From Selaginella moellendorffii (lineage: Eukaryota > Plantae > Lycopodiophyta): a stretch of 12,281 nucleotides of DNA. The stretch covers positions 187,437-199,717 of the forward strand of contig NW_003314286.1 in the NCBI RefSeq assembly GCF_000143415.4. Reading direction: 5' to 3'. Both the position numbers and the translations under genes were made by a program. This document shows positions 1 through 12,281 of the stretch, piece after piece. Numbering within the stretch: the stretch's first letter is position 1; each line of letters opens with the position of its first letter. Under the pieces are notes generated by a model that saw nothing but the letters and a program-made list of their open reading frames with translations, was not told where the DNA came from and searched no databases.

Positions 1-55
1 TGCTACAAACATTGGCATGCACCTGATTGGGCTCTCGAGTGCAGTCCGGTTACAG

Positions 56-77
56 ATGGCGTGTAGCCTCACGCCAT
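56..77. repeat. 22-bp palindrome copy 1 ATGGCGTG-TAGCCT-CACGCCAT
   Basis: Perfect 8-bp arms, extendable to 10 bp (54-79). Confidence 0.95.
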
Positions 78-115
78 CTTAGGATGCAGCCTCAAGACAT
101 CTGATGCAGTGGTGA

Positions 116-137
116 ATGGCGTGTGGCCTCACGTTAT
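116..137. repeat. Palindrome copy 2 ATGGCGTG-TGGCCT-CACGTTAT
   Basis: Two substitutions in the right arm. Confidence 0.9.
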
Positions 138-192
138 TTCCAGCTGCTAGCTTTTCATCTGTCAGCTCTAATTGTTGTGCATTTTTGAACAG

Positions 193-3100
193 GCGAGGAA
201 TTGCGTTCTTCTTCCAGCCACTGTCAATGTGGATGCAGAGAATGGGGAGGAGCTCACCAGTTGGACTTTCGGGATGGAAGGCGAGGATCTGATGCTGTAC
301 AACACAGATGGTGGGAGAAAAGAATGCATGGGGATCCTCATCCAAGTGACAGACACTCCATGCAGTTCCATGCAAGAATATGGACTGGCACTTGTGGTAG
401 AGACAGCGTCCGCCTTCAAGATCCACCTTGCACATCCTAGCGGCTTTCCGGAGGGGGGCAGCGGCTATGAGGAATTCCTAGAGGGAGCTAGGGAGAGGTT
501 GTCCAGGAGGCCCACAATTTCAAAGACGCTGCGGGTCTATGAAGATCACATGGAATCCACGGACCTCACCTACGGCGATGTTCAAAAACTATATTCCAAC
601 ATTGAGCCGTTGAGAGTGCCTCCAGTTTGCGAAGCGAAGGGGAAGGGGGTCGATCTGGAAACTACCCCGAAGCAGAAAAGGGTGGTCAAGCTCAAGCCGA
701 CGTCCGACTCTGCTGCTCCAAAAAAGAAGCTACTCGGTGATGCCATTGCCTCGGGTTTGAACACTACACCCACCAAAAAGAAGAGCCGCAAAGAGCAGAA
801 AGAGCAAGAAGAGGCAACAAAAATCGTCGCAGATAATAGTACTTGTTACTATTCCAACAAAGTATATACAATCGACGTGAGCCGTATCGAGATCCAAAGC
901 AAATACAACCACAGGCTAGTATCTGATGAGTGGGTGGAGAAACTGAAGCAGAAGATGCTGGCAAGTCCAGTAACACCCGACATCGCAGACGTGATCCCCT
1001 ACTACCGAACAATGAAGGGCGAGACGAGGTTTCCAGACTTGATCAATAGGAAGGTGTTGGACGATCAGAACATCCGGTTCTATGCCGTCTCCGGGCAGCA
1101 TTCTAGCTTGGCGATGCAACAGATAGTTGTGGATATTATGGTGGGCGAGGAGGTGAAGAAAGTCTTCAAGACAAGAGTTGTCCGCCTGATAAAAGGCAAC
1201 TCGCCCCTCCGATCTATCATATACATCTCCCACGCGCAGAATGTCAAGCAAGAAACGTGCTACAAATCGGGTCTGCACGAGACATTGGCACGAACACGGA
1301 AGCTCTGGGTTCAACTGAAGAAGCCACAAAAACCAAGACAAGGACGTGCACTAGCAACTAGCGCCTGGCAGGTAAGCCTCGTTGCATGTGGCATAGCATG
1401 TGGCCTCACGCCATTTCCATTGCAGGAATTCTCGAGTCTTCTCTCGAAAACACTGGGGGTCAATGACACACTCAGCATCCATAACATTCTACTCGCGACA
1501 AAAGTTGTTTTTGACAAATGGGTAGATGTGCTAAGGAGGTACCATGACGGGGAGTTGCTAAACTCAATGGGTGTGGAGGACGGCCGGAAGCCCAATGATT
1601 TGAAGCTCAACGCCTTGTGTTTCTCGCGGTCTCTAGACGACGACGACCTTCTGACAGTGGCTAATGCTCTTCTACGTGGTGAGGTAGTCTTCAACAAGAC
1701 CAAAATGACTCCCGGCCATATTGTGACATACGAGGACTTGTGCACGACTCTGAGAGCTCGTGCGCTATTGAAGGATTGGATCTTCGAGCAAGTGGCCGTG
1801 GCGAGGGTGAGCATCGACACCACGCAAGAGATGATGGAAGAGCTGGACTTGTCAAATGAAGACATCGACGAGTACGTGAAGGGGGCCCCCAAGTTCATCG
1901 ATCTGCTGCGGGATGCCACGAAAAGTAAAGCTGAGAAGTTGGATCAGTATCCAAATTTCATTAAGAGGGATGTCGACCGCCGGCTTCAGAAACAGCTCGA
2001 CCCCGCAGCAGAGGCCTATCGAGAACCTTACCGGGTATACGTGAATTCGGATGAGGATCAAAGGTGGAGGAGCATCGTTTCCCGCGGAGATGAGCAGGTC
2101 AAGAACATCTTTTGTGTGATGGACTTCACAAACGAGGAGATCACTCATGCAGACAAAGTCAGCTCCATCATTGACTTAATGGTGGGACTTGCGGAGGTGG
2201 AATCTTCAGTCTACTATATGATCTACGACTCCGAATCCTATCACAAGTTCTGGAAGGCCTTGAACGAGGTGAAGGCTCGGTTGAAAGGCAAGGAGATGCG
2301 GGAGATCCATGGGATAATGGCTAAGAAGAAGATACCGACGAATGTCCGCATCTTCACAGTCGCCCTTGTTATTGGTCCTGCAGCAGAGTGGGACTGGAGT
2401 GACTTCCCAGCTTCGTTCAACAAAGCCGATCGAATTGATCTGAGGGAGGTCAATTTACCCGTGCCTGAGGAACTGAAGACGGCTATGGAGCTTTCGAATC
2501 CAAAGAAAGCTCCAGGTGCAGCATGGGAAATGCTCAGCTGGGTCTTCAACGCAATAGCGGGTGACTCCAAGGGCAAATGCGTTGTCGAGTACAACTGCGG
2601 CGGACTATGCTTTCGAGCCGCACTACTCAAGGGTGTCCCGTGTGTTGCGGTGACAAACTCCATTGAAGAGGTGACTTCAATGGAGCATATAATTACAATT
2701 GCCAAAGAAAAACAGTATCTTCTCTACGAACCTGGTGAGTACGCACTTTAAGTTTAAATGTTATCTCACAAGCTCTGTATGCAGGAGCGTGGCCACCCCC
2801 AGATGCTGAAACGGCGTTAACAGCTACTGATGTTAGGCCGAGGTCACAACCTGCACAAGGTAAGGTCACGTGAGGCCTCACGCCATTTTGATTATAGATC
2901 GTTGTGAATATTCAGACACGAGGACTGAAAAGCGCACTGGTGGCGCGTCGAAGAAGGACAAACAGACAAGCAATAGGAAAAAAGGAGGTACAAATTATAT
3001 TTGCAATGGCGTGTGGTCTCATGCCATTCCTTGCAGGAGACACTTCTTCAAAGGCAAAACAGGCAAGCACCAGCCAAGCTCAAACTGACAGTGGTCATAA

Positions 3101-5541
3101 AAAGCGAAAGCACGTTGGACAGTCGTCGGGATCAGAGGCGTTTGATTCGAAAAGGAAGAAGGGCAACGAAAAGATGATAGGTAATGCCTCGCGGTTATGG
3201 CGTGTGTGCTCATGCCATTCATTGCAGATCAAGGGCTGAGTGAAAGGAGCCAGTCACCAGCTTCTGACTCAGATTCCTATGGCGGACTCCCCTTCCCCAA
3301 TCTCAATGGAGAGGTACAATGGATGAGGGATGCTTTTCAAGTCAGGGCCACGTTTTTCTCATCTCGTCGTCTTCGAAGGGTGCAAGAACGTGCAGAAACC
3401 ATGTTAAGACAGTCGGGTGAGGATACGGTCCTAGGTCACGCACTAAAACAGGCTATGGATGTCTTGTATTTTGAGATGGAGACTCGGTCAGATGATTTTT
3501 CCAAGATGGTCCTGGAAAAACAAGCAATCCAGCCTGAGCAGCCTATGGAAGAAATGCAAGAGGGGGATGAGGAGCCAGAGAAAGATAATGAGCAGGAAGA
3601 GCAGAAGGACGAAGAGGAGGACGAAGAAGAGGAGGACGAAGAAGAGGAGGACGAAGAGGACTTGGATGGTCCTCACAATGGTGACGATCACAATAACGAC
3701 GATGACGATGATGACGATGATGGCCAGCCTGAGGTGGCCAAAGAGCAGCGGAGGAAGGTCATACAAGACAAACCATCAGGTAAATAATAGTACATCCATT
3801 CCTAACCTTTTACCATTTCTAACATTGTCCATGTAGGTCGCAGAAGAAATGGTAAGTAGAGATTATTCAGTTGAATTAAGATACAAACTCTAGCCTTTAG
3901 TGTCGAGGAAGGATAGTGCCAAGCAAGGGTCGAAACGTATGTCCAATCCTTCAGAATCAGCAGTGCGCCCAAGTGATATCGGTCCTAGTTCCTCAATAGC
4001 AGTTGATGGTAAATACAGTATAGTCGATTCAATGTGCTAATGAGTTTGTTTTTAGTAGCACGGGAGGATACCATCTCAATCGAAGGGAGATATTTGGACA
4101 TGCATATGGATCCGCCAGTGGACTCTACTTGCCTGCAAGAGTCATCAGAGTTGGTGGAGGCTACTATCCATATCAACGCCAAGCAAGCTGACCACGCTCC
4201 ACTTGATGCTGCCCATACCACTGAGTCAATCTTGTCCACGTATCCAACTGACGGTGACCAGGCGCCATTGGACCCGCATGAGGCCGCCCCAGCCGCCGAG
4301 CCGGTCGTATCCTCATTTCCAACGTGTGCCCAATCGTCTGACTACGCGCCGTTGGAACCTCCCTACACCGCCCCTGCTGCCTGTTCGGTCATGTCCACTT
4401 TGCCAACGGAGGCACCAGCTGAAATGGCGTGTGATCACACGCCATCGGAACCACCCCATGCCACTGTTGAGCCAGTTGTACCAGAGTCTACAGCTGAAAT
4501 GGCATGTGCCCACACGCCATCGGATGCGATTGACCCCACATTGCAGAGGAGAGTATTTCCGCCCTTCACGTTTCCTCGACCAAAACCCTCTGAACGACCA
4601 TCGGGAGCACCATTCGCTAATATTGTAGATGGTAAAATTGACTTGTACCATTTTTTATGCTAACGCATTTCATTTCAGAGTCACGGCGAAAGTACTGTAT
4701 CGTTTTTGATCTGAACGGTGTCCTTTTCTCCCATGAGCGTGGCTCGTCCTCGAATGTCACTGCACCCTCCAAAGCCTGCGGTCGCAAGTTGGTCAAAAGA
4801 GACAGATTCACATTAATCACACGGGAGAAACTGCGGGATCTAATAATGACCATGCGACACTTAAAACAGAGGGCCGGGTTCAATTTGCAATTGGGAGTTT
4901 GGACATCCATGATGCGCCACAATGCATTAACGTTGCTACAGATGATGCACGATCAGACGCGAGTAATATTACCATTTGACTTTCTCCTAACGCAGGAGGA
5001 TTGCTTGACTATGGTCCATGTGAGGGGTAGCAAGCCCATCTTCGTCAAGGCAGAGGCTGTAGTGATGAACCGGACTGCTAGGTCAAGTGAAATCCTCATC
5101 ATCGATGACTCGCCGATTAAAACTGCAGCGAACACGCACACATATGCAGTGCACCCCATCTCTTGCAGTATGGAAACTAGGGAGAAGAAACCGTATGTTC
5201 TGGGGGACCTTGCAAAACGGCTTGAAGCGATGGTGATAGAGAACCGGCCAGTCCAGGAGGTGGCTGCAGAAATCAACCAAATGGCAGATGGAACGGTATA
5301 TCAGAAGCCATTTGATCGGACAGACACCAGTCATCATTTATGGCATGTATATTGTCTAGCCAAACACTATCCGCATCTCCATAATCTGCTCAACCGGATG
5401 GGTTCTTCGACCACTGAACATGAGCGTGGACGTATTAGAGAAGAGATGGCATTACTATTGGGTTTAAATCCTGATAGTGTGGAGAGTGATGAAATTCCAA
5501 GATTATTGTATAGGCATTGGAGGCAAAAAATAACAGTCTGA
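193..5541 (+). CDS. Multi-exon gene, ~1630 aa: ParB/Srx-like + degenerate N4/N6-DNA-MTase-like + acidic/Pro-rich linker + FCP1-like HAD phosphatase domain (5' end uncertain)
   Basis: Exons 193-1371, 1426-2734, 2785-2859, 2916-2987, 3037-3180, 3228-3779, 3837-3851, 3901-4008, 4056-4631 and 4679-5541 sum to 4893 nt. They read in one frame with no stop until TGA 5539-5541. All nine introns are GT..AG and 47-57 nt. The model links ORFs 172-2751, 2870-3088, 2904-3239, 3197-3787, 4034-4663 and 4657-5541. The first in-frame ATG is at 274. An upstream exon (83-111, intron 112-192) is possible. Confidence 0.8.
862..1310 (+). other. ParB/Sulfiredoxin-like (DGQHR-type) domain
   Basis: IDVSRIEIQSKYNHRLVSDEWVEKLKQKM...RFYAVSGQHSSLAM...RVVRLIK...IIYISHAQNVKQE follows the ParB N-terminal pattern (I.I..I....PR...E.L.EL..SI / Y.II.GERR..A / ALIEN.QRE). 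GQHS is at 1093-1104. Recognised by eye, no HMM run. Confidence 0.65.
1372..1425 (+). other. Intron, 54 nt, phase 0, in frame and stop-free; contains the palindrome
   Basis: CAG|GTAAGC...CCATTGCAG|GAA. The ORF track reads through it as VSLVACGIACGLTPFPLQ. Confidence 0.75.
1393..1414. repeat. Palindrome copy 3 ATAGCATG-TGGCCT-CACGCCAT (intronic)
   Basis: Preceded by a duplicated half-site GCATGTGGC. Confidence 0.9.
2026..2715 (+). other. Degenerate beta-class N4/N6 DNA methyltransferase-like domain (probably inactive)
   Basis: The C-terminal block NPKKAPGAAWEMLSWVFNAIAGDSKGKCVVEYNCGGLCFRAALLKGVPCVAVTNSIEEV parallels HPTQKP..LL..LI....G..VLDPF.GSGTT..AA...GR..IG.E. The upstream NIFCVMDFTN sits where DLI.TDPPY would be. 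The canonical motifs are substituted. Confidence 0.5.
2735..2784 (+). other. Intron, 50 nt, phase 1
   Basis: CCTG|GTGAGT...GTATGCAG|GA. Removes the TAA that ends ORF 172-2751. Confidence 0.8.
2860..2915 (+). other. Intron, 56 nt, phase 1 (alternative in-frame acceptor at 2897); contains the palindrome
   Basis: AAG|GTAAGG...ATTCAG|AC. Confidence 0.7.
2865..2886. repeat. Palindrome copy 4 GTCACGTG-AGGCCT-CACGCCAT (intronic)
   Basis: The core CGTGAGGCCTCACG (2869-2882) is a perfect 14-bp palindrome. Confidence 0.9.
2988..3036 (+). other. Intron, 49 nt, phase 1; contains the palindrome
   Basis: GAG|GTACAA...CCTTGCAG|GA. Restores the frame between ORFs 2870 and 2904. Confidence 0.8.
3006..3027. 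repeat. Palindrome copy 5 ATGGCGTG-TGGTCT-CATGCCAT (intronic)
   Basis: Read directly from the sequence. Confidence 0.95.
3181..3227 (+). other. Intron, 47 nt, phase 1; contains the palindrome
   Basis: TAG|GTAATG...CATTGCAG|AT. Restores the frame into ORF 3197. Confidence 0.8.
3197..3218. repeat. Palindrome copy 6 ATGGCGTG-TGTGCT-CATGCCAT (intronic)
   Basis: Read directly from the sequence. Confidence 0.95.
3548..3722 (+). repeat. Coding low-complexity acidic tract (poly-E/D); 15-nt GAAGAAGAGGAGGAC and GACGAT repeats
   Basis: EEMQEGDEEPEKDNEQEEQKDEEEDEEEEDEEEEDEEDLD...DDDDDDDD. Confidence 0.9.
3780..3900 (+). other. Two phase-1 introns (3780-3836, 3852-3900) flanking a 15-nt micro-exon (3837-3851)
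   Basis: CAG|GTAAAT...ATGTAG|GTCGCAGAAGAAATG|GTAAGT...CTTTAG|TG. A single 121-nt intron would also keep the frame. Confidence 0.65.
4009..4055 (+). other. Intron, 47 nt, phase 1 (TAGTAG tandem acceptor)
   Basis: ATG|GTAAAT...GCTAAT...TTTTTAG|TAG. Confidence 0.75.
4424..4445. repeat. Palindrome copy 7 ATGGCGTGTGATCACACGCCAT (exonic, perfect 22-bp palindrome)
   Basis: Self-complementary over all 22 nt. Translated as MACDHTP. Confidence 0.95.
4499..4520. repeat. Palindrome copy 8 ATGGCATG-TGCCCA-CACGCCAT (exonic)
   Basis: 75 bp after copy 7, with shared flanks CAGCTGAA...CGGA. Translated as MACAHTP. Confidence 0.95.
4632..4678 (+). other. Intron, 47 nt, phase 1, joining the HAD exon to the upstream gene
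   Basis: ATG|GTAAAA...GCTAAC...CATTTCAG|AG. The frame matches ORF 4657. Confidence 0.8.
4679..5260 (+). other. FCP1/NIF-like HAD-superfamily phosphatase domain (last exon)
   Basis: HAD motifs in the expected order: CIVFDLNGVL (Asp codon at 4708), LGVWTSMMRHNA, KPIFVK, ILIIDDSPIK (5095-5121), then HP. The DLNG variant is typical of plant/fungal FCP1-homology proteins. Confidence 0.8.
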
Positions 5542-5575
5542 GATGGCATATATTTATTTAAAAATGTAACTTATT

Positions 5576-5597
5576 ATGGCATGGGGTTCCATGCCAT
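5576..5597. repeat. Palindrome copy 9 ATGGCATG-GGGTTC-CATGCCAT (35 nt after the stop codon)
   Basis: Perfect 9-bp arms. Both arms carry the symmetric CG-to-CA/TG change. Confidence 0.9.
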
Positions 5598-5856
5598 TGT
5601 ATTAATATTAAAAGACAATTCTTTGAGAGGATTTGCATTATACTAGAAGTGTTACAGCATGTTATTGGAAGTCTACGAAGTTGTTTTATTAATAAGGGGA
5701 AAGTAAAGATTGAATGGGGACTTGGGCTCCACCTAGACTCGGAGCAACTGAGCCAATATTAAAAGGATGGAAAGAAATTGGACGACGATGACAAGGAGAA
5801 GAGAGAGGTGAAGCAGTGAGAAGTGATTGAGTAGACATTTCCTTGTTTAAAATAAA

Positions 5857-5878
5857 ATGGCATGTGCCTCAATGCAGT
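5857..5878. repeat. Degenerate palindrome copy 10 ATGGCATG-TGCCTC-AATGCAGT
   Basis: Left arm intact, right arm decayed. Confidence 0.55.
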
Positions 5879-5885
5879 TGAATTT

Positions 5886-8216
5886 TGTTATATTTATATA
5901 CTATATAAAGGTTTGGAAACCTTATTTTACAAGTGGGATAATGACAATTCCCACTTTAACGAAATAGAGCTTCTTAACACATCCATAAATTATACTTCAT
6001 AATGTAAAGCTAATGAAGAGCATGTTTACATCAATCCAAAAGCTTAGCATAATGAAGCTATGCTCAACAAGTGATTACCAAATGATCCTCCATGAATCCA
6101 TCTTTAGCGAGACTTAACTCACTTCATAACAAACACAAGAGAAATCATCAATGATCAATATATTTCAACTCAAATCCAACAAGGACTCAATCACTTCATA
6201 CCGATCACTAACTCTTTCTTTTGTAAAGTTAGCATAGTTCATGACTAAATCACTTTTCAAAGAAAAGCAACCCCTACTAAATAATCTAGTCTAGAACACA
6301 ACTAACTCAAACTTGCCACTCAGTTCATTTGAACGTCAACATAGTTGCTAACTAGCAAATGCACGAATGCTAATAATACAAAGCTACAACCAAATCATCA
6401 ACACTATCTCTATCGAGAGTAATGAAACTCAATATCAATCCTAAGAAAAGACATTTCATCTCACTTAAATCTCAACATCAATAATATCAATGACAAGGCA
6501 TTACTTCAATGCCATCAACACTATAACAAAGCTATAAGAAAGCAAGAATGAATTACCACTCAAAACTCTCTAGCAACTAAACTAACCAAAGTCGAAGATA
6601 CTTTAGTCAATATCCGAGACCAATCCTTTAGCAAAACTCAGTTATAGATAACACTTCCTCAAGGAATGAATCACCACATCCAAGACTCAATGAAATCCAA
6701 CACTATAAACTAAACGCAACCAAATGATATCGACAAAGGAACCAACATGCCAACATAGAAAAGAAACCATGTAAGTCTAACTACACGATCCTCTGCAACA
6801 CCATCCGGTAAAGTAAGCCCATCACTGCTAAATCATCATCGAGTGAAGTAAGTGTCAATAGTCTTCGATAAAGTTTACAAGCAATCACTAGTCACAAAAC
6901 AACTAACAATCACTCTTTCAACTTGCCTTCACAAGACCCAACACTCAACTCATATTATTGAGTCACATACTTATCCAATATGAACATAACACCTCAAGTA
7001 CGAGATATTAACTCATGGACAAGTATGAACTAAATGACCACTTGAATCTAACTCAACTGCAATAAACTCACTAATGCATTTAGCCAATAGCTCTGAGCAT
7101 GCTTTAAAGAGGCTAGCTATGCATAACCAACACTCAGTCGAAACTAAAATGAAGACCATGAGATGGATTCATATTGGTACACAACCTCCATTTAGACAAA
7201 GCTACAGTATGGGTACCAACATCTCAACTGCAAACAACTAAATTAGATATCACTATCCTTAGTCAAGGTGCAGGACCACCAAGACCAAGTCAAGATCAGT
7301 GAGAGCTCACTACTCTCATAAAGTCTAATGAAATGCAAGGTGCAACCTGCCACCAAGCACAACGTTATAGAAGAAAGTGCAACAACCATTCTTCTATACC
7401 AACTCTAAACTCTATCAAACTCAATTGCTTTAACCCTAAAAGTCAACATCCTTTTTGGGTTGCATTATACAAACTACCTACTAAGGTCTAAGCTAACCAA
7501 AGTCAACTCCAACCCCTTCACTAATTTGTATTGGCTTACAAAAACGGAATGGTTTTCGGACAAAGTGATTAACAGATTAGCCATTGGAAAAGCCTAAGAA
7601 AATTTTTGGAAAATTTTCCATCCCAGAGAAAGAATAACTCTTAGTCCAGGAATGCAAACTTTCAAGACTCAACCAACTTCCTCTTACTAACAACTTCACA
7701 TATGTTCACCTCAACACAAATTCTCATGATCCATAGTATGCTTAAGCATCGAACATCTTTGCCCATTCTTCTAATATCTAACACTGACATCTGCAAAATG
7801 CAAATGGAACATCCAAGACGTGATCACGAAGACCATATCTTCAGATATCCATATTCCATTAACACTTTTCTTCAACCACTTTCAAGATCCAATGTGAAGT
7901 CAAAACACTAACAAGAAAAATGACATGGAAAATCAAGATCTAAGGAAAATTCCTCATCACTCGAATCAACAATGCCACTTCCACTAACACAAGTTCTAGC
8001 GATGTCAATGCCTCAACTACACACCTTCTCTATCCAACAATTTAGTCCAAGTGCTAACGGATCAACTGACAAGCCATAGCAAGTGAATGCTATAACGTTT
8101 TTCCAACACCTAATGGGCAAACCTCAAGAAACAAGGTACCAACTTAAACTTAGCATAATGAATCACCATAAATAATCTAGTTAAAGCTACTTCAATGCTA
8201 TTTCGTGCAAGTAGAC
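5886..8216. mobile_element. Probable decayed transposon/retroelement-derived DNA (A/C-rich on +)
   Basis: Abrupt composition change at TGTTA (5886), strong strand asymmetry and no long ORF. The class cannot be determined from the sequence alone. Confidence 0.35.
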
Positions 8217-9096
8217 TGTAAGCGACTAATTTTTCCATTCTACTTTAGTCACTTAACTACACCTCCAACCACTTGGAGGAGTCTCATTCACAACCTCCAT
8301 AAGTCTTATTTTGGACTTGGGCTTGCTAGCCCCGAGAATGGCATCCCTGCCACTCGACCTTTGCACTTGGTCCAAGTGCTCCACGTGTCCGATCCCATGA
8401 CCGACACCCCAAGGTATCACCGACATATCGGCCTGCTACGCCAAGGCCATGTCTATTCACCATGGTCACATTGGTGGTCTGACACCACCTACATCACAGT
8501 CCCGTCTCTCAAAGACTGGGCCATCCGTCCATGAGTGATCATCCCAGATCCACTCCTTAGCATCCTTAGGATGCCCATAGACATGGGGAATAGCCTTCCC
8601 CAATATCCCCTTTTCGGTCACCACCAAGTCCCTTTCTGCTCATGGCCGTGTTCGCCAACACTACCACTGGATCAAGGCCCACAGGCCCGACCACTAAGTC
8701 CCATTGTCCTCTGGAACTTCCTCACCACATGACTGTATCCTTGGTCACTACACCAGAGGACTATTCCTCTTCCTTTCCACAGTCTAGGCCTTTGGGACAA
8801 CATTTCGGAACACCGTGGCCTTACACAAGCCTCGTGGGTACTCTCCCCACCTTTCACCTTTGGGTGCTCTAGCCATGGGCTTAGAGTGAGGTTCTGTTGA
8901 GCCACGCCTGGTATCCAAGTAAGTAGTGCCACCCACACTTGGACTGGGAGCATCGGCCAGTTGATCTTCCGAGGGAACTAGAGCCGGCTCTTGAACACTT
9001 CACCAAGCTACCCCGCTTGTCGGTTTGTATTCACTCTAGTCTTGAACTTCCCAGTGGTTGGTTCATCACCCAACACTGGGTATGGCCTTCCTAAGC

Positions 9097-9163
9097 CCAA
9101 CTGGCCTTTCCTGGGCCAAACTGGCTTTTTCTGGCCAAACTGGCTTTTCCTGGCCAAACTGGG
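9097..9163 (+). repeat. 19-bp tandem repeat CCAAACTGGCTTTTYCTGG x~3.5
   Basis: Units start at 9097, 9116, 9135 and 9154. Confidence 0.9.
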
Positions 9164-9219
9164 TCCACTGGGCTCCAACCCCCACACTCTCCCTACTATA
9201 CTTTTGGAACCCCCCGTAG

Positions 9220-9237
9220 CCCCCCCCCCCCCCCCCC
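9220..9237 (+). repeat. C18 homopolymer
   Basis: Read directly; adjacent to the assembly gap. Confidence 0.9.
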
Positions 9238-9266
9238 TATTCTCCTGGGTGACTATACCTTTGGGC

Positions 9267-9841
9267 NNNNNNNNNNNNNNNNNNNNNNNNNNNNNNNNNN
9301 NNNNNNNNNNNNNNNNNNNNNNNNNNNNNNNNNNNNNNNNNNNNNNNNNNNNNNNNNNNNNNNNNNNNNNNNNNNNNNNNNNNNNNNNNNNNNNNNNNNN
9401 NNNNNNNNNNNNNNNNNNNNNNNNNNNNNNNNNNNNNNNNNNNNNNNNNNNNNNNNNNNNNNNNNNNNNNNNNNNNNNNNNNNNNNNNNNNNNNNNNNNN
9501 NNNNNNNNNNNNNNNNNNNNNNNNNNNNNNNNNNNNNNNNNNNNNNNNNNNNNNNNNNNNNNNNNNNNNNNNNNNNNNNNNNNNNNNNNNNNNNNNNNNN
9601 NNNNNNNNNNNNNNNNNNNNNNNNNNNNNNNNNNNNNNNNNNNNNNNNNNNNNNNNNNNNNNNNNNNNNNNNNNNNNNNNNNNNNNNNNNNNNNNNNNNN
9701 NNNNNNNNNNNNNNNNNNNNNNNNNNNNNNNNNNNNNNNNNNNNNNNNNNNNNNNNNNNNNNNNNNNNNNNNNNNNNNNNNNNNNNNNNNNNNNNNNNNN
9801 NNNNNNNNNNNNNNNNNNNNNNNNNNNNNNNNNNNNNNNNN
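9267..9841. other. Assembly gap (575 N)
   Basis: Run of N. Confidence 1.
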
Positions 9842-9992
9842 ACTCCATCTCGGGTCCATCTCGGACTCCATCTCGGACTCCATCTCGGGTCCACCTCGGA
9901 CTCCAACTCGGGTCCACCTCGGACTCCATCTTGGACTCCATCTCGGGTCCATCTCGAACTCCATCTCGGACTCCATCTCGGGTCCATCTCGG
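9842..9992 (+). repeat. Minisatellite of 12-nt (ACTCCATCTCGG) and 11-nt (GTCCATCTCGG) units, 13 visible copies
   Basis: Unit order ABAABABAABAAB. Probably extends into the gap. Confidence 0.95.
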
Positions 9993-11400
9993 ACACTTCC
10001 ACGTGTCATGTGTTGGTCCTTTTGGGTCCCTTTTTGGAACCTCACTTATTGCTCGCTTCGTGCTCGTTCCTCGAACACTTTGTTGGGAGTTCCACTCCCA
10101 CTCTCGACCTTTCAAGTCGGAGCTTTTAGTACAAACGTGTTACGCTCGTTTGGCTTTTGCTTTGGCCACTACCACGTGGCACCCTTTTGGCTCCACTTTA
10201 GGGCCTAGGGATTTTGTGTCTCACAACTCCACCACCCATAGACGAAGTTCGATATCCTCATCGAATAGTAAAGCCTTTTATAAAGTAACACCCACATGTA
10301 TTACCATTTCCATCCTTGGCACCCAGCCAAAATTTGTCTATGGTTTGACACCGAAGGCTCACCATGCCTTGTCCATCCTCTAAGGAACAGAGCCTCTCCA
10401 ACTTAGAGGCTCATTCGACCACTTATGGTGGTTCTCTCCTTTTATTAGTTTAGTTCTCACTAAACCTGTTAAAGACACCTTCTCTAACTCAATCCCACTA
10501 CTCATTCTCGAGTGGTCTCACCTTCCATTGATATAACCCTTGCACTTTGGAACTTTTAATTCTGACTTTTTGTAGTCAATTTCCTGGGTGTCTCCGACAC
10601 CTTGCATTGCACATATTGTGCAACTCCACTTCCTATCCTAGGAAGTTCTCTACTTGAGGGCAACATTATCCTTTCTTCGATTTCGTGCCACCTTTGGCAC
10701 TAAGTTCCAGTTATCATAATTTGTGCTAGGGCTGTCCACAGCCCTATCATTTGGCTACCTTACCGCTCCCACCTTTGGAGCTTCCACTTTCGGCACATTG
10801 AAGCAATTGGGAATCCATATTTGGGAACATATTGCCTTTTCCACAATCCGTTAGTACCTAACACCTTAGTGTTCTTGGCCTAACTTTGCCATTTGGATTC
10901 TTTCCCATGATTCCCGTGGCTCTGTACTTAGCCACTAGTCTTTTGCTCCTATTCTTGATTGTTGCACCTAGCAACATAGGATAGCTACCTCCATTCTTGA
11001 GGTATCCTTTTGGTTCCATAGCAAACACTTTCCTTCGCCAAGTCTAGAGGGTATTCACCTTTAGTACGTCTCTTTAACATTTTCCGCTGTGGGCTCTATC
11101 CACGGCCTAACTTTAAGACCCTCTCATGGATCTCTTACAGAGACTACTTTCCTTGGACTTACTATGCTATTGCATTGGCATAATTTATTTCCCTTAGGTG
11201 TTCTTCCCACTTGGTCACCTTGACTAAGCCACACCATTATCAATTGTTCAAATTAACACTTTGAACTAGGAACCTTATTCCTTACCCAAATAAGGACCTT
11301 ATCCCTATTTAGCCACAAGATCACCGAGTGATCTCATCTTGGCACCTTAACAGGTTTGCCAATAGGCACTAGGTCTTCCCGACCTTTAAGTTATTCACCA

Positions 11401-11670
11401 TGACCTCGGGGGCATCCCCCACACTTGGCGGTGCACCCAAACCAGCCCTTACGGCCAAGGGTCCATAGCAACTGAGATTAGGTGTCCCCATCTCATTCAC
11501 CACGTCCTTGATGCCACTCGCACCAAAGTGTTCAAGTTAGATATGCCGAGCCACATTAAATAATCTAACTGTGCATCACGACTCCAAGGCATCCCTCGCT
11601 TGGCGGTGTGCCCAAACCAGTCCTCTCACTGAGAGTCCATGACCACTGAAAAATGAGTGTCCTCATTTTC
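11401..11670 (+). repeat. Diverged ~90-bp direct repeat pair (period ~177 bp)
   Basis: GGCATCCC..CTTGGCGGTG..CCCAAACCAG.CCT...GTCCAT...ACTGA...GTGTCC.CAT at 11411 and 11588. Confidence 0.8.
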
Positions 11671-12281
11671 CAAACCATCACCACACCCTAGTGATTTGGG
11701 ACTCGAACCCAACCTCCGCATATGCATCTACGGATGGCATCCCTCCAGACGCCTGGCATGACTCCCCACACCGGTGCACCAACATGTATTTAAAGCGCAC
11801 TACAGATCACAAGTTAGGAACTTAATTCCTCCACACTGCCAAGTCCTCTCACTTGACATATCTGTGATCATGCATGGACTCCTCCATGCTCGGCCCCCTG
11901 GGCCACCCCTTTGAAGTTGGCTCTTTCAACTAGGGTATTCATTCCCCCTGACTTGCCAATGTCACTTAACAAGTCATTCGGCCACCGTAACATGGTTCAT
12001 GCATAAGCGTGAAAGTTCTTAACCATTGACTTTCGTTCATAGCCCTCTCTTTGAACACTTGGGATCTACTCCCCTAACCTTGATAGCCTCGCCTCTCGGC
12101 AAGTTTCAAGACCACGCTTCTGTTGCGCCACTCTGATTTCGCGCGCTCTATAAACCATTTACACTTGGACGTCTAGGTACTTATCTACCTAGGGGAACGT
12201 TCAAGGAACTTTATTCCTTATCTTGCTAAGGCCTCTCCTTTCACAAGCTTTCCAATATCCATATAGTCTAACATGGACAAT

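What the first reader, a model, noticed from the sequence alone, without database searches (positions are those of the whole stretch)
56..5878. Eukaryotic ParB-like gene studded with ~10 copies of a 22-bp palindrome: a candidate ParB/parS-like system on a mobile element
Seen: ATGGCRTG-N6-CAYGCCAT occurs at 56, 116, 1393, 2865, 3006, 3197, 4424, 4499, 5576 and (decayed) 5857. The arms are conserved, the 6-nt centre varies in sequence but not length, and one copy is a perfect palindrome. I saw no clear copy in the following 6.4 kb. The gene they decorate encodes a ParB/Srx-like domain. Established: bacterial ParB dimers load at clustered 16-bp palindromic parS sites, often near parB itself. Inference: these are binding or loading sites for a dimeric protein, possibly this one, marking its own locus or element for partitioning, chromatin protection/anti-silencing or transposition. 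Fixed spacing with a free centre fits protein recognition better than simple decay of a repeat.
Basis: partly seen in the sequence, partly recalled or inferred. Interest (0 to 1): 0.92.

Follow-up and report, generated by a model that had tools for sequence, protein, structure and literature searches.

The report
Transposon gene studded with private palindromes
A repeated, transposon-type gene in the spikemoss Selaginella encodes a protein with a bacterial ParB-type fold and is packed, mostly in its tiny introns, with copies of one 22-base palindrome; relatives in liverworts carry the same gene with different palindromes, so these are probably the element's own docking sites, an idea already proposed for algal and Arabidopsis transposons.

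Summary
Ten copies of ATGGCRTG-N6-CAYGCCAT lie at 56-5878 and none in the next 6.4 kb; 8 match within 2 mismatches against 0 expected.

They decorate an intact 10-exon, 1,643-codon gene. It encodes a ParB N-domain fold seen only by structure (Z 11.3 to CTP-bound ParB), a helical domain, a degenerate N6/N4-methylase-like region, an acidic tract and a NIF/FCP1-like domain.

Eight of the ten sites are non-coding, and four sit in tiny introns (P = 6.5e-5).

In relatives the same gene carries different private palindromes:
- Calypogeia: 14 copies
- Riccia: 19 and 36 copies
- a metagenome contig: 26 copies

The homologous intron holds them in three to four lineages. In one Riccia locus they also cover a neighbouring multi-copy transposase-like gene.

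So this is best read as a self-recognition site array of a DNA-transposon family. The binder is unproven; it could be the ParB-fold protein or the transposase. It is not a true ParABS system: the GERR motif is lost, there is no ParA and no HTH was found.

The idea exists for red and brown algal transposons and for Arabidopsis VANC. This scan has already found the same family on at least ten other pieces of this genome. No transposase lies in this window, and RNA-seq shows the gene silent.

The parts
56..77 (.). Palindrome copy, 0 mismatches, upstream of the ORF and followed by CTTAG
116..137 (.). Palindrome copy, 2 mismatches, upstream of the ORF and followed by TTCCAG
172..5541 (+). Accessory gene with 10 exons: 172-1371, 1426-2734, 2785-2859, 2898-2987, 3037-3180, 3228-3779, 3837-3851, 3901-4008, 4056-4631, 4679-5541. 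It gives an intact 1,643-codon ORF. The first in-frame ATG is at 274. The nine introns are 38-57 nt long and eight of them are phase 1.
   Evidence: splicing is inferred from ORF continuity and GT..AG, with no RNA support
859..1263 (+). ParB/Srx N-domain fold; the family motif F.A(I/V)SGQHS sits where ParB has GERR
1372..1425 (+). Intron 1 (phase 0, in-frame 54 nt). Its position is conserved in relatives L003, L005 and L009. It holds the palindrome at 1393-1414.
1426..1995 (+). Conserved all-helical middle domain (pLDDT about 80) with no fold match
2026..2733 (+). Degenerate N6/N4 DNA-methyltransferase-like region. DFTN at 2122-2133 stands where the family has DPPY. YNCGGL within 2581-2613 stands where motif I has FxGxG.
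   Evidence: Atlas score 0.90 to PF01555 clusters; Z 5-6 to SAM-MTase halves; the motif reading is inference
2860..2897 (+). Intron 3, holding the decayed palindrome at 2865-2886
2988..3036 (+). Intron 4, holding the palindrome at 3006-3027
3181..3227 (+). Intron 5, holding the palindrome at 3197-3218
4424..4445 (.). Perfect 22-bp palindrome inside exon 9, translated as EMACDHTPS in a Pro/Ala-rich linker
4499..4520 (.). Palindrome copy inside exon 9, the 75-bp tandem partner of the copy at 4424
4693..5139 (+). NIF/FCP1-like domain. The catalytic DxD reads DLN (4708-4716), as in the fern relatives (P0020, P0038) and the unidentified-organism relative L003.
5576..5597 (.). Palindrome copy 35 nt after the stop codon
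5857..5878 (.). Decayed last palindrome copy (3 mismatches)
5901..12281 (.). Unrelated G-poor non-coding or repeat DNA with an N gap at 9267-9842. It has no palindrome copy and no similarity to the transposase-like protein of Riccia.

Best explanation
The window holds the accessory-gene half of a multi-copy DNA-transposon family of Selaginella moellendorffii.

The gene is intact in this copy. Its domains, in order, are a ParB N-domain fold, a helical domain, a probably dead N6/N4-methylase-like domain, an acidic tract and a NIF/FCP1-like domain with DxD changed to DxN.

The 22-bp palindromes are cis-acting sites private to this element lineage. They are kept wherever the DNA tolerates them: introns, the 5' and 3' non-coding DNA, and a disordered coding linker. 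A dimeric element-encoded protein most likely binds them, so that the element recognises its own copies.

The prime candidate binder is the ParB-fold protein, perhaps through its adjacent helical domain. The likely purpose is either local anti-silencing or transcription control, as shown for Arabidopsis VANC, or ParB-like bridging and condensation of a long element for transposition.

Shown here: the sites, their non-coding bias, the ParB fold, the private palindromes in relatives, and the multi-copy decay.

Inferred: protein binding, the identity of the binder, and the purpose.
For: - The motif gives 8 hits against 0 expected, all within 1-5900.
- 4 of the 6 genic sites lie in introns that make up 4.7% of possible placements, P = 6.5e-5.
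- ParB fold: AF2 model pLDDT 81; Foldseek top hits are all ParB, Noc, PadC, Srx or KorB; VIA-align gives Z 11.3 and rmsd 2.3 A over 95 residues to 7bnr.
- Relatives with the same gene each carry their own palindrome and none of the others', apart from one loose (3 or fewer mismatches) hit of the Riccia pattern in L009 and the two Riccia loci sharing one motif. L005 has CAACGC-N-GCGTTG 26 times against 0.04 expected. Calypogeia L009 has GCCTCGAGA-N3-TCTCGAGGC 14 times against 0.01. Riccia L008 has 19 and L010 has 36 copies of CTTCGGGA-N4-TCCCGAAG against 0.1.
- The homologous intron after the ParB domain holds these sites in the window (1), L005 (2) and L009 (4).
- In Riccia L010 the sites span 14.6 kb. 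This includes the introns of a divergently oriented gene of the DUF7869 family, which has more than 20 paralogues.
- The control L001 has 0 copies in 21 kb.
- Paralogous copies exist at 95-100% identity and differ by 3 synonymous and 15 non-synonymous changes.
- Precedents: red-algal PAG3 with inverted-repeat arrays (10.1101/2025.02.11.637652); the Ectocarpus Sola1 ParB-methylase gene (PMC12477816); VANC and its motifs (PMC5735166).
Against: - No binding data exist.
- The ParB match covers only the NTPase domain, and the GERR arginines are absent.
- No HTH or other DNA-binding fold was recognised in the helical domain.
- No transposase or element end lies in this window, and L008 and L009 show no shared transposase within 10 kb.
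- The gene is silent in three RNA-seq runs, so even splicing is unconfirmed.
- An earlier scan note (s1-334423, untested) says relatives without this gene also have private palindromes, which would favour the transposase as binder.
- L003 shows only weak palindromes and L007 shows none.
Confidence: 0.6

Rival explanations
1. The palindromes are binding sites of the element's transposase, like the reiterated subterminal motifs of En/Spm, Ac or Mutator elements. The ParB-fold gene is merely cargo that lies among them.
For: In Riccia L010 the sites also fill the transposase-like gene region and its introns. No DNA-binding domain was identified in the ParB-fold protein.
Against: The sites are spread through the element interior rather than concentrated at the ends. 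In the window, L009 and L008 they track the accessory gene, with no transposase within reach. The gene and the palindromes co-occur in 5 of 7 loci with this gene. ParB-domain accessory proteins next to inverted-repeat arrays recur in unrelated transposon superfamilies.
Confidence: 0.2
2. The palindromes act at the RNA level or as intron building blocks. They could be hairpins that supply the branch site of tiny introns (introner-like) or that feed small-RNA production.
For: Four copies sit 9-11 nt before the 3' splice site. All intronic and upstream copies read CTCAY across the centre and arm junction, which resembles a branch point.
Against: Copies also lie in an exon, after the stop codon and upstream. 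The arm changes do not co-vary to keep pairing. Intron 1 is ancestral: it has the same position and phase in four lineages, with a different or no palindrome inside. Relatives have long tandem arrays outside genes. No target-site duplications flank the copies.
Confidence: 0.08
3. The palindromes are functionless short repeats that spread by local duplication and gene conversion inside a decaying repeat family.
For: Some copies are tandem duplicates (4424 and 4499; the 26- and 35-bp arrays in L005 and L009). The copies decay by CpG loss, and coding differences between paralogues look neutral.
Against: Independent lineages each keep 14-36 copies of a different palindrome around the same gene, including in the same intron. 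Only the 22-bp core is shared between copies while the flanks differ. The exclusion from conserved coding sequence is strong.
Confidence: 0.1

Closest known systems
Red-algal transposon accessory gene PAG3 (ParB-like N domain plus 2OG oxygenase) with adjacent tandem inverted-repeat arrays (Petroll et al. 2025, bioRxiv 10.1101/2025.02.11.637652)
   Same: It is a ParB-N-type accessory protein carried by giant DNA transposons, with inverted repeats next to the gene, and the authors propose that the protein binds its own element. Their best HHpred hit is the same PDB entry (7BNR) as my best structural match.
   Different: The partner domains differ: a degenerate methylase plus NIF here, against a 2OG oxygenase there. 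The transposon superfamily differs. Here the sites are dispersed in introns and flanks, and the hosts are land plants.
Ectocarpus Sola1-1_Ec32 accessory protein (ParB-like plus N4/N6 DNA methyltransferase, 1104 aa; PMC12477816)
   Same: The domain order is ParB then methylase(-like). [quoted passage not shown] The authors suggest it binds and modifies its own transposon.
   Different: The methylase motifs look inactivated here. There is an extra acidic tract and a NIF domain. No palindrome array is reported there. I could not test Sola1 membership of this copy.
Arabidopsis VANDAL/VANC sequence-specific anti-silencing system (Hosaka et al. 2017, PMC5735166)
   Same: A transposon-encoded accessory protein binds short motifs that accumulate, often as tandem repeats, in the non-coding regions of its own element, and the motifs differ between related elements. 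This is the best experimentally supported analogue of how the system may work.
   Different: VANC is not reported there as a ParB-type protein (I made no sequence or fold comparison). No function has been tested for the present system.
Bacterial ParB-parS (ParABS, Noc, KorB)
   Same: The ParB N-domain fold is shared (Z 9-11). Clustered palindromic sites lie around the gene that encodes the protein.
   Different: There is no ParA. GERR is replaced by SGQHS. No HTH was recognised. The sites are 22 bp long and lineage-private. The host is a eukaryotic nuclear transposon. Partition is not expected.
En/Spm TNPA and its reiterated 12-bp subterminal motifs (from my own knowledge, not checked here)
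   Same: A two-protein DNA transposon in which an accessory DNA-binding protein recognises many reiterated motifs in the element.
   Different: Those motifs are confined to the subterminal regions, and TNPA is unrelated to ParB.

Membership tests
Bacterial ParABS partition system | ParB/Srx N-terminal domain fold | tested here: met
   AF2 model pLDDT 81. Foldseek top hits are ParB, Noc, PadC and Srx. VIA-align Z 11.3, rmsd 2.3 A over 95 residues to 7bnr_A.
Bacterial ParABS partition system | CTP-binding GERRxRA arginine motif | tested here: not met
   The family-invariant motif is SGQHS, with no arginines (alignment A2). That it occupies the equivalent position is inferred from the strand-helix pattern of the model.
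Bacterial ParABS partition system | HTH DNA-binding domain after the N domain | tested here: inconclusive
   The helical domain at aa 401-590 is modelled at pLDDT about 80 but has no significant fold match.
Bacterial ParABS partition system | ParA ATPase partner encoded nearby | tested here: not met
   The only long reading frames in the window belong to this gene, and Pfam finds only NIF.
Bacterial ParABS partition system | Clustered palindromic sites near the gene | tested here: met
   10 copies in 5.9 kb against 0 expected.
ParB-domain accessory genes of giant eukaryotic DNA transposons (PAG3, Sola1-1_Ec32 type) | ParB-like N domain in a non-transposase gene | tested here: met
ParB-domain accessory genes of giant eukaryotic DNA transposons (PAG3, Sola1-1_Ec32 type) | Linked DNA or chromatin-modifying domain (PF01555 methylase or 2OG oxygenase) | tested here: inconclusive
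   Atlas features score 0.90 to PF01555 clusters. VIA-align gives only Z 5-6 to SAM-MTase halves on a poor model. The catalytic motifs are degenerate, and Pfam is silent.
ParB-domain accessory genes of giant eukaryotic DNA transposons (PAG3, Sola1-1_Ec32 type) | Carried inside a DNA transposon beside a transposase | tested here: inconclusive
   There is no transposase in this window. In Riccia L010 a divergent multi-copy DUF7869 gene lies within the same palindrome field. Paralogous copies exist in Selaginella. Full elements are reported only by earlier scan notes.
ParB-domain accessory genes of giant eukaryotic DNA transposons (PAG3, Sola1-1_Ec32 type) | Inverted-repeat arrays adjacent to the gene | tested here: met
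Sola1 superfamily DNA transposon | Sola1-type DDE transposase | not testable with these tools
   No transposase lies in the window, no Sola1 reference sequence or profile was available, and the Riccia neighbour is only 'DUF7869'.
Sola1 superfamily DNA transposon | Terminal inverted repeats with target-site duplication | not testable with these tools
   The element ends are not identifiable from a single copy; the window starts inside the element, and other genome copies could not be fetched.
VANC-type sequence-specific anti-silencing system | Target motifs in non-coding parts that differ between related elements | tested here: met
   Cross table of four private motifs in eight loci; non-coding bias.
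VANC-type sequence-specific anti-silencing system | The accessory protein binds the motifs and removes DNA methylation | not testable with these tools
   This needs EMSA, ChIP and bisulfite data.
Introner-like element / MITE | Each copy is an insertion that created its intron, or carries target-site duplications | tested here: not met
   Intron 1 is ancestral, with the same site and phase in L003, L005 and L009. No duplications flank the copies. The origin of introns 3-5 is not resolved.

The most novel reading that the evidence does not exclude
Non-seed land plants (a lycophyte and liverworts with site arrays, and the gene alone seen in a fern) harbour a transposon-borne system derived from ParB. 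In it, a protein built from inactivated enzyme folds (ParB NTPase, N6/N4 methylase, CTD phosphatase) loads as a dimer on lineage-private palindromes that contain CpG. These palindromes are spread through the whole element, even inside its own introns. The protein thereby senses the methylation state of the element and marks or condenses it, for anti-silencing or for synapsis of a very long transposon.
Probability: 0.3. Interest if true: 0.85.

Novelty: new variant of a known kind. Interest (0 to 1): 0.6.

Why it matters
How large DNA transposons recognise their own copies and escape silencing is known experimentally only for Arabidopsis VANC. ParB-domain accessory genes with nearby inverted repeats have just been noticed in red and brown algae, but nobody has shown what they bind.

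This family offers a clean, testable case in land plants. Several lineages have the same protein architecture, and each has a different 13-22-bp palindrome present 14-36 times, so specificity swaps and methylation sensitivity could be tested directly by EMSA or DAP-seq.

It also shows binding-site arrays housed inside a gene's own introns. If binding is sequence-specific, such proteins could serve as programmable chromatin-targeting modules.

Tried and rejected
**Searches for close copies or relatives that gave nothing useful**
- The search for homologous proteins with the 859-aa ORF found nothing. With the NIF ORF it found only an unrelated host NIF gene in a compact genome.
- Exact look-up of window ORFs in public assemblies found no record. 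Other Selaginella copies therefore could not be fetched, and the element ends and transposase could not be examined here.
- The search for related loci could not use alignment A2 (too little conserved) and found no relative with A4.
- P0005 (bacterial RTX) and P0006 (yeast) were low-complexity artefacts.

**Sequence family searches**
- Pfam, NCBIfam and a PDB sequence profile do not see ParB.

**Structure**
- The AF2 model of aa 401-836 was poor over the methylase-like part. Foldseek and VIA-align gave no significant match for the helical domain.

**RNA**
- RNA-seq gave almost no reads and no splice joints, so the introns are unconfirmed by RNA.

**Transposon context in relatives**
- No long terminal inverted repeats were found in L009.
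- No coding region is shared between L008 and L009 outside the gene.

**Other readings tested**
- The MITE reading was rejected because no target-site duplications flank the copies.
- The L003 palindrome family is weak, about 3 degenerate copies.

**Papers**
- Iyer et al. 2011 and the journal version of Petroll et al. were not held.
- Searching for 'DUF7869' found no paper.
Full report
**1. Observation**

The pattern ATGGCRTG-N6-CAYGCCAT matches 8 times with at most 2 mismatches, at 56, 116, 1393, 3006, 3197, 4424, 4499 and 5576. None is expected in 200 dinucleotide-preserving shuffles. A looser scan adds decayed copies at 2865 and 5857, and finds nothing better than 4-5 mismatches in 5900-12281. 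The copy at 4424 is a perfect 22-bp palindrome.

Two refinements apply.
- The R and Y positions are the CpG of each arm, changed to CpA or TpG. The two arms do not co-vary (4 Watson-Crick, 2 G.T, 2 A.C). This looks like decay of methylated CpG, not a tolerated degeneracy.
- The centre is semi-conserved. It begins TG in 7 of 10 copies.

**2. The gene**

Joining ten exons through nine canonical GT..AG introns of 38-57 nt gives one uninterrupted 1,643-codon reading frame that ends at 5541. This copy is therefore intact.

Three raw RNA-seq runs of the species gave only 0-4 reads and no splice joints. The gene is silent there, and the intron model rests on frame continuity alone.

Contigs of another run lie on the window at 95-100% identity. 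They differ by 19 substitutions and a 9-bp in-frame insertion, and one loose end shows a further palindrome just upstream of window position 8 in other copies. Several paralogous copies therefore exist. Their coding differences are 3 synonymous against 15 non-synonymous, which fits neutral decay after copying.

Earlier notes of this scan identify the genome as Selaginella moellendorffii. They report the same family on at least ten other pieces as 10-20-kb two-gene DNA transposons. I could not fetch those copies.

**3. Where the palindromes sit**

| Location | Copies |
|---|---|
| Introns 1, 3, 4 and 5, each ending 9-11 nt before the 3' splice AG | 4 |
| Exon 9, in-frame in a Pro/Ala-rich linker, as a 75-bp tandem pair | 2 |
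| Upstream of the ORF | 2 |
| After the stop codon | 2 |

Introns offer only 4.7% of possible placements in the gene, so 4 of 6 genic sites being intronic has P = 6.5e-5. Only the 22-bp core is shared between copies. The flanks differ and there are no target-site duplications.

In all intronic and upstream copies, the junction of centre and right arm reads CTCAY, a branch-point-like sequence. The exonic copies read CACAC instead.

**4. The protein**

- **ParB domain.** Pfam and NCBIfam see only the C-terminal NIF/FCP1-like domain. An exhaustive phmmer search found only 21 weak relatives. Fifteen aligned segments define a conserved domain with the invariant motif SGQHS. The AF2 model of that domain (pLDDT 81, pTM 0.70) matches ParB, Noc, PadC, KorB and sulfiredoxin by Foldseek. 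VIA-align gives Z 11.3 and rmsd 2.3 A over 95 residues to CTP-bound ParB 7bnr. The ParB/Srx N-domain fold is therefore real. The match covers only that domain, and the GERR arginines of CTP-binding ParBs are absent.
- **Helical domain.** The next 190 residues form a confident all-helical domain with no significant fold match.
- **Methylase-like region.** Residues of about 600-836 resemble N6/N4 DNA methylases only weakly: Atlas features score 0.90 to PF01555 clusters, and VIA-align gives Z 5-6 to SAM-methyltransferase halves on a poor model. By inspection, DPPY is DFTN and motif I is YNCGGL, so the enzyme is probably dead. This last point is inference.
- **NIF domain.** The catalytic motif reads DLN instead of DxD, as in the fern relatives and L003.

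**5. Relatives**

The same architecture occurs in the liverworts Riccia sorocarpa and Calypogeia fissa, in the fern Adiantum nelumboides, and on metagenome and Logan contigs. Most of the loci I could read carry their own palindrome family and none of the window's.

| Locus | Palindrome | Copies | Expected by chance |
|---|---|---|---|
| L005 (metagenome) | CAACGC-N-GCGTTG | 26 | 0.04 |
| L009 (Calypogeia) | GCCTCGAGA-N3-TCTCGAGGC | 14 | 0.01 |
| L008 (Riccia) | CTTCGGGA-N4-TCCCGAAG | 19 | 0.09 |
| L010 (Riccia) | CTTCGGGA-N4-TCCCGAAG | 36 | 0.10 |

L003 has only a weak family and L007 has none. A control of 21 kb of ordinary Selaginella DNA (L001) has no copy of the window motif.

All four private palindromes contain CpG in each arm and show TpG/CpA decay.

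The intron that follows the ParB domain has the same position and phase in the window, L003, L005 and L009. It holds 1, 0, 2 and 4 copies of the respective private palindrome. That intron is therefore ancestral and the palindromes were installed in it later. This argues against an introner-type origin for that intron.

In Riccia L010 the palindromes span 952-15570. They also fill the introns of a divergently oriented gene of the DUF7869/DUF8039 family, which has more than 20 dispersed paralogues in that genome and is a likely transposase. No such gene lies in this window, L008 or L009. By analogy with L010 it would lie upstream of window position 1.

**6. Literature**

- The Ectocarpus transposon survey describes a Sola1 element with an opposite-strand accessory gene that encodes ParB-like plus DNA-methylase domains. 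It suggests such proteins bind and modify their own transposon (PMC12477816).
- The Bostrychia genome paper describes PAG3, a ParB-like domain plus a 2OG oxygenase whose best HHpred hit is 7BNR. Tandem arrays of inverted repeats lie adjacent to it, and the authors make the same proposal (10.1101/2025.02.11.637652).
- Arabidopsis VANC is an experimentally supported case. It is a transposon accessory protein that binds motif arrays in its own non-coding DNA, and the motifs differ between related elements (PMC5735166).
- I found no report for land plants with this architecture.

**7. Interpretation**

The best reading (confidence about 0.6) is an element-private array of binding sites for a dimeric element-encoded protein, used for self-recognition. 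The ParB-fold protein is the prime candidate binder and the transposase is the main alternative (about 0.2). RNA-level or intron-building roles (about 0.08) and functionless repeats (about 0.1) fit the data less well.

It is not a member of the bacterial ParABS family. The fold and the palindromes are there, but the CTP motif, a recognisable HTH domain and ParA are not.

It is a new variant of a recently noticed kind. This scan has already met the same family many times on other DNA of this genome. What this window adds is an intact copy of the accessory gene and the intron anatomy.

Noticed in passing
window 5901-12281: The + strand is strongly G-poor over 6.3 kb: G is 12% in 5901-8200 and 17-20% beyond. 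There are no long ORFs. The region contains an N gap at 9267-9842, a C run at about 9218-9238, and 'CTCCATCTCGGA'-type tandem repeats at 9843-9990. The cause of the strand asymmetry is unexplained.
   Followed up: no
L001:10001-11425 (Selaginella scaffold GL377575.1): An annotated 451-aa Selaginella protein (SELMODRAFT_409495 / LOC9650508) matches only the helical and methylase-motif parts of this gene, at 28% identity. It lacks the ParB domain and has no palindromes. It sits between ordinary ArfGap and VQ genes, so it may be a domesticated derivative.
   Followed up: partly
window 1393-1414, 2865-2886, 3006-3027, 3197-3218, 56-77, 116-137: In every intronic and upstream copy, the last two centre bases plus the right arm read CTCAY, a branch-point-like sequence placed about 15-18 nt before an AG. 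The exonic copies read CACAC. The copies at 56 and 116 may therefore lie in 5'UTR introns.
   Followed up: partly
window 4708-4716; L003:4310-4330: The NIF/FCP1-like domain has DLN in place of the catalytic DxD in the window, in two Adiantum proteins and in L003. The phosphatase module is probably impaired across the family.
   Followed up: partly
L010:3516-8854 (Riccia sorocarpa): A divergently oriented multi-exon gene of the DUF7869/DUF8039 family lies inside the same palindrome field as the ParB-NIF gene. It has more than 20 paralogues at 53-98% identity on all chromosomes. It is a likely transposase of unknown superfamily. No paper mentions DUF7869.
   Followed up: partly
window 4319 and 8 (paralogous copies seen in run X1): Another genomic copy has a 9-bp in-frame insertion after 4319. 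Copies also carry an additional palindrome, ATGGCATGAGGCCACATGCCAT, just upstream of window position 8, while window bases 1-7 differ from them.
   Followed up: no
L005, L008, L009, L010 and window: All four private palindromes contain at least one CpG in each arm and show TpG/CpA decay. Binding, if any, could therefore be sensitive to CG methylation.
   Followed up: no
L008:4353-6053: A second, partial, inverted copy of the NIF end of the gene (54% identity) carries four copies of a consistently altered palindrome variant, CTTAGAGACGCGTCCCGAAG.
   Followed up: no
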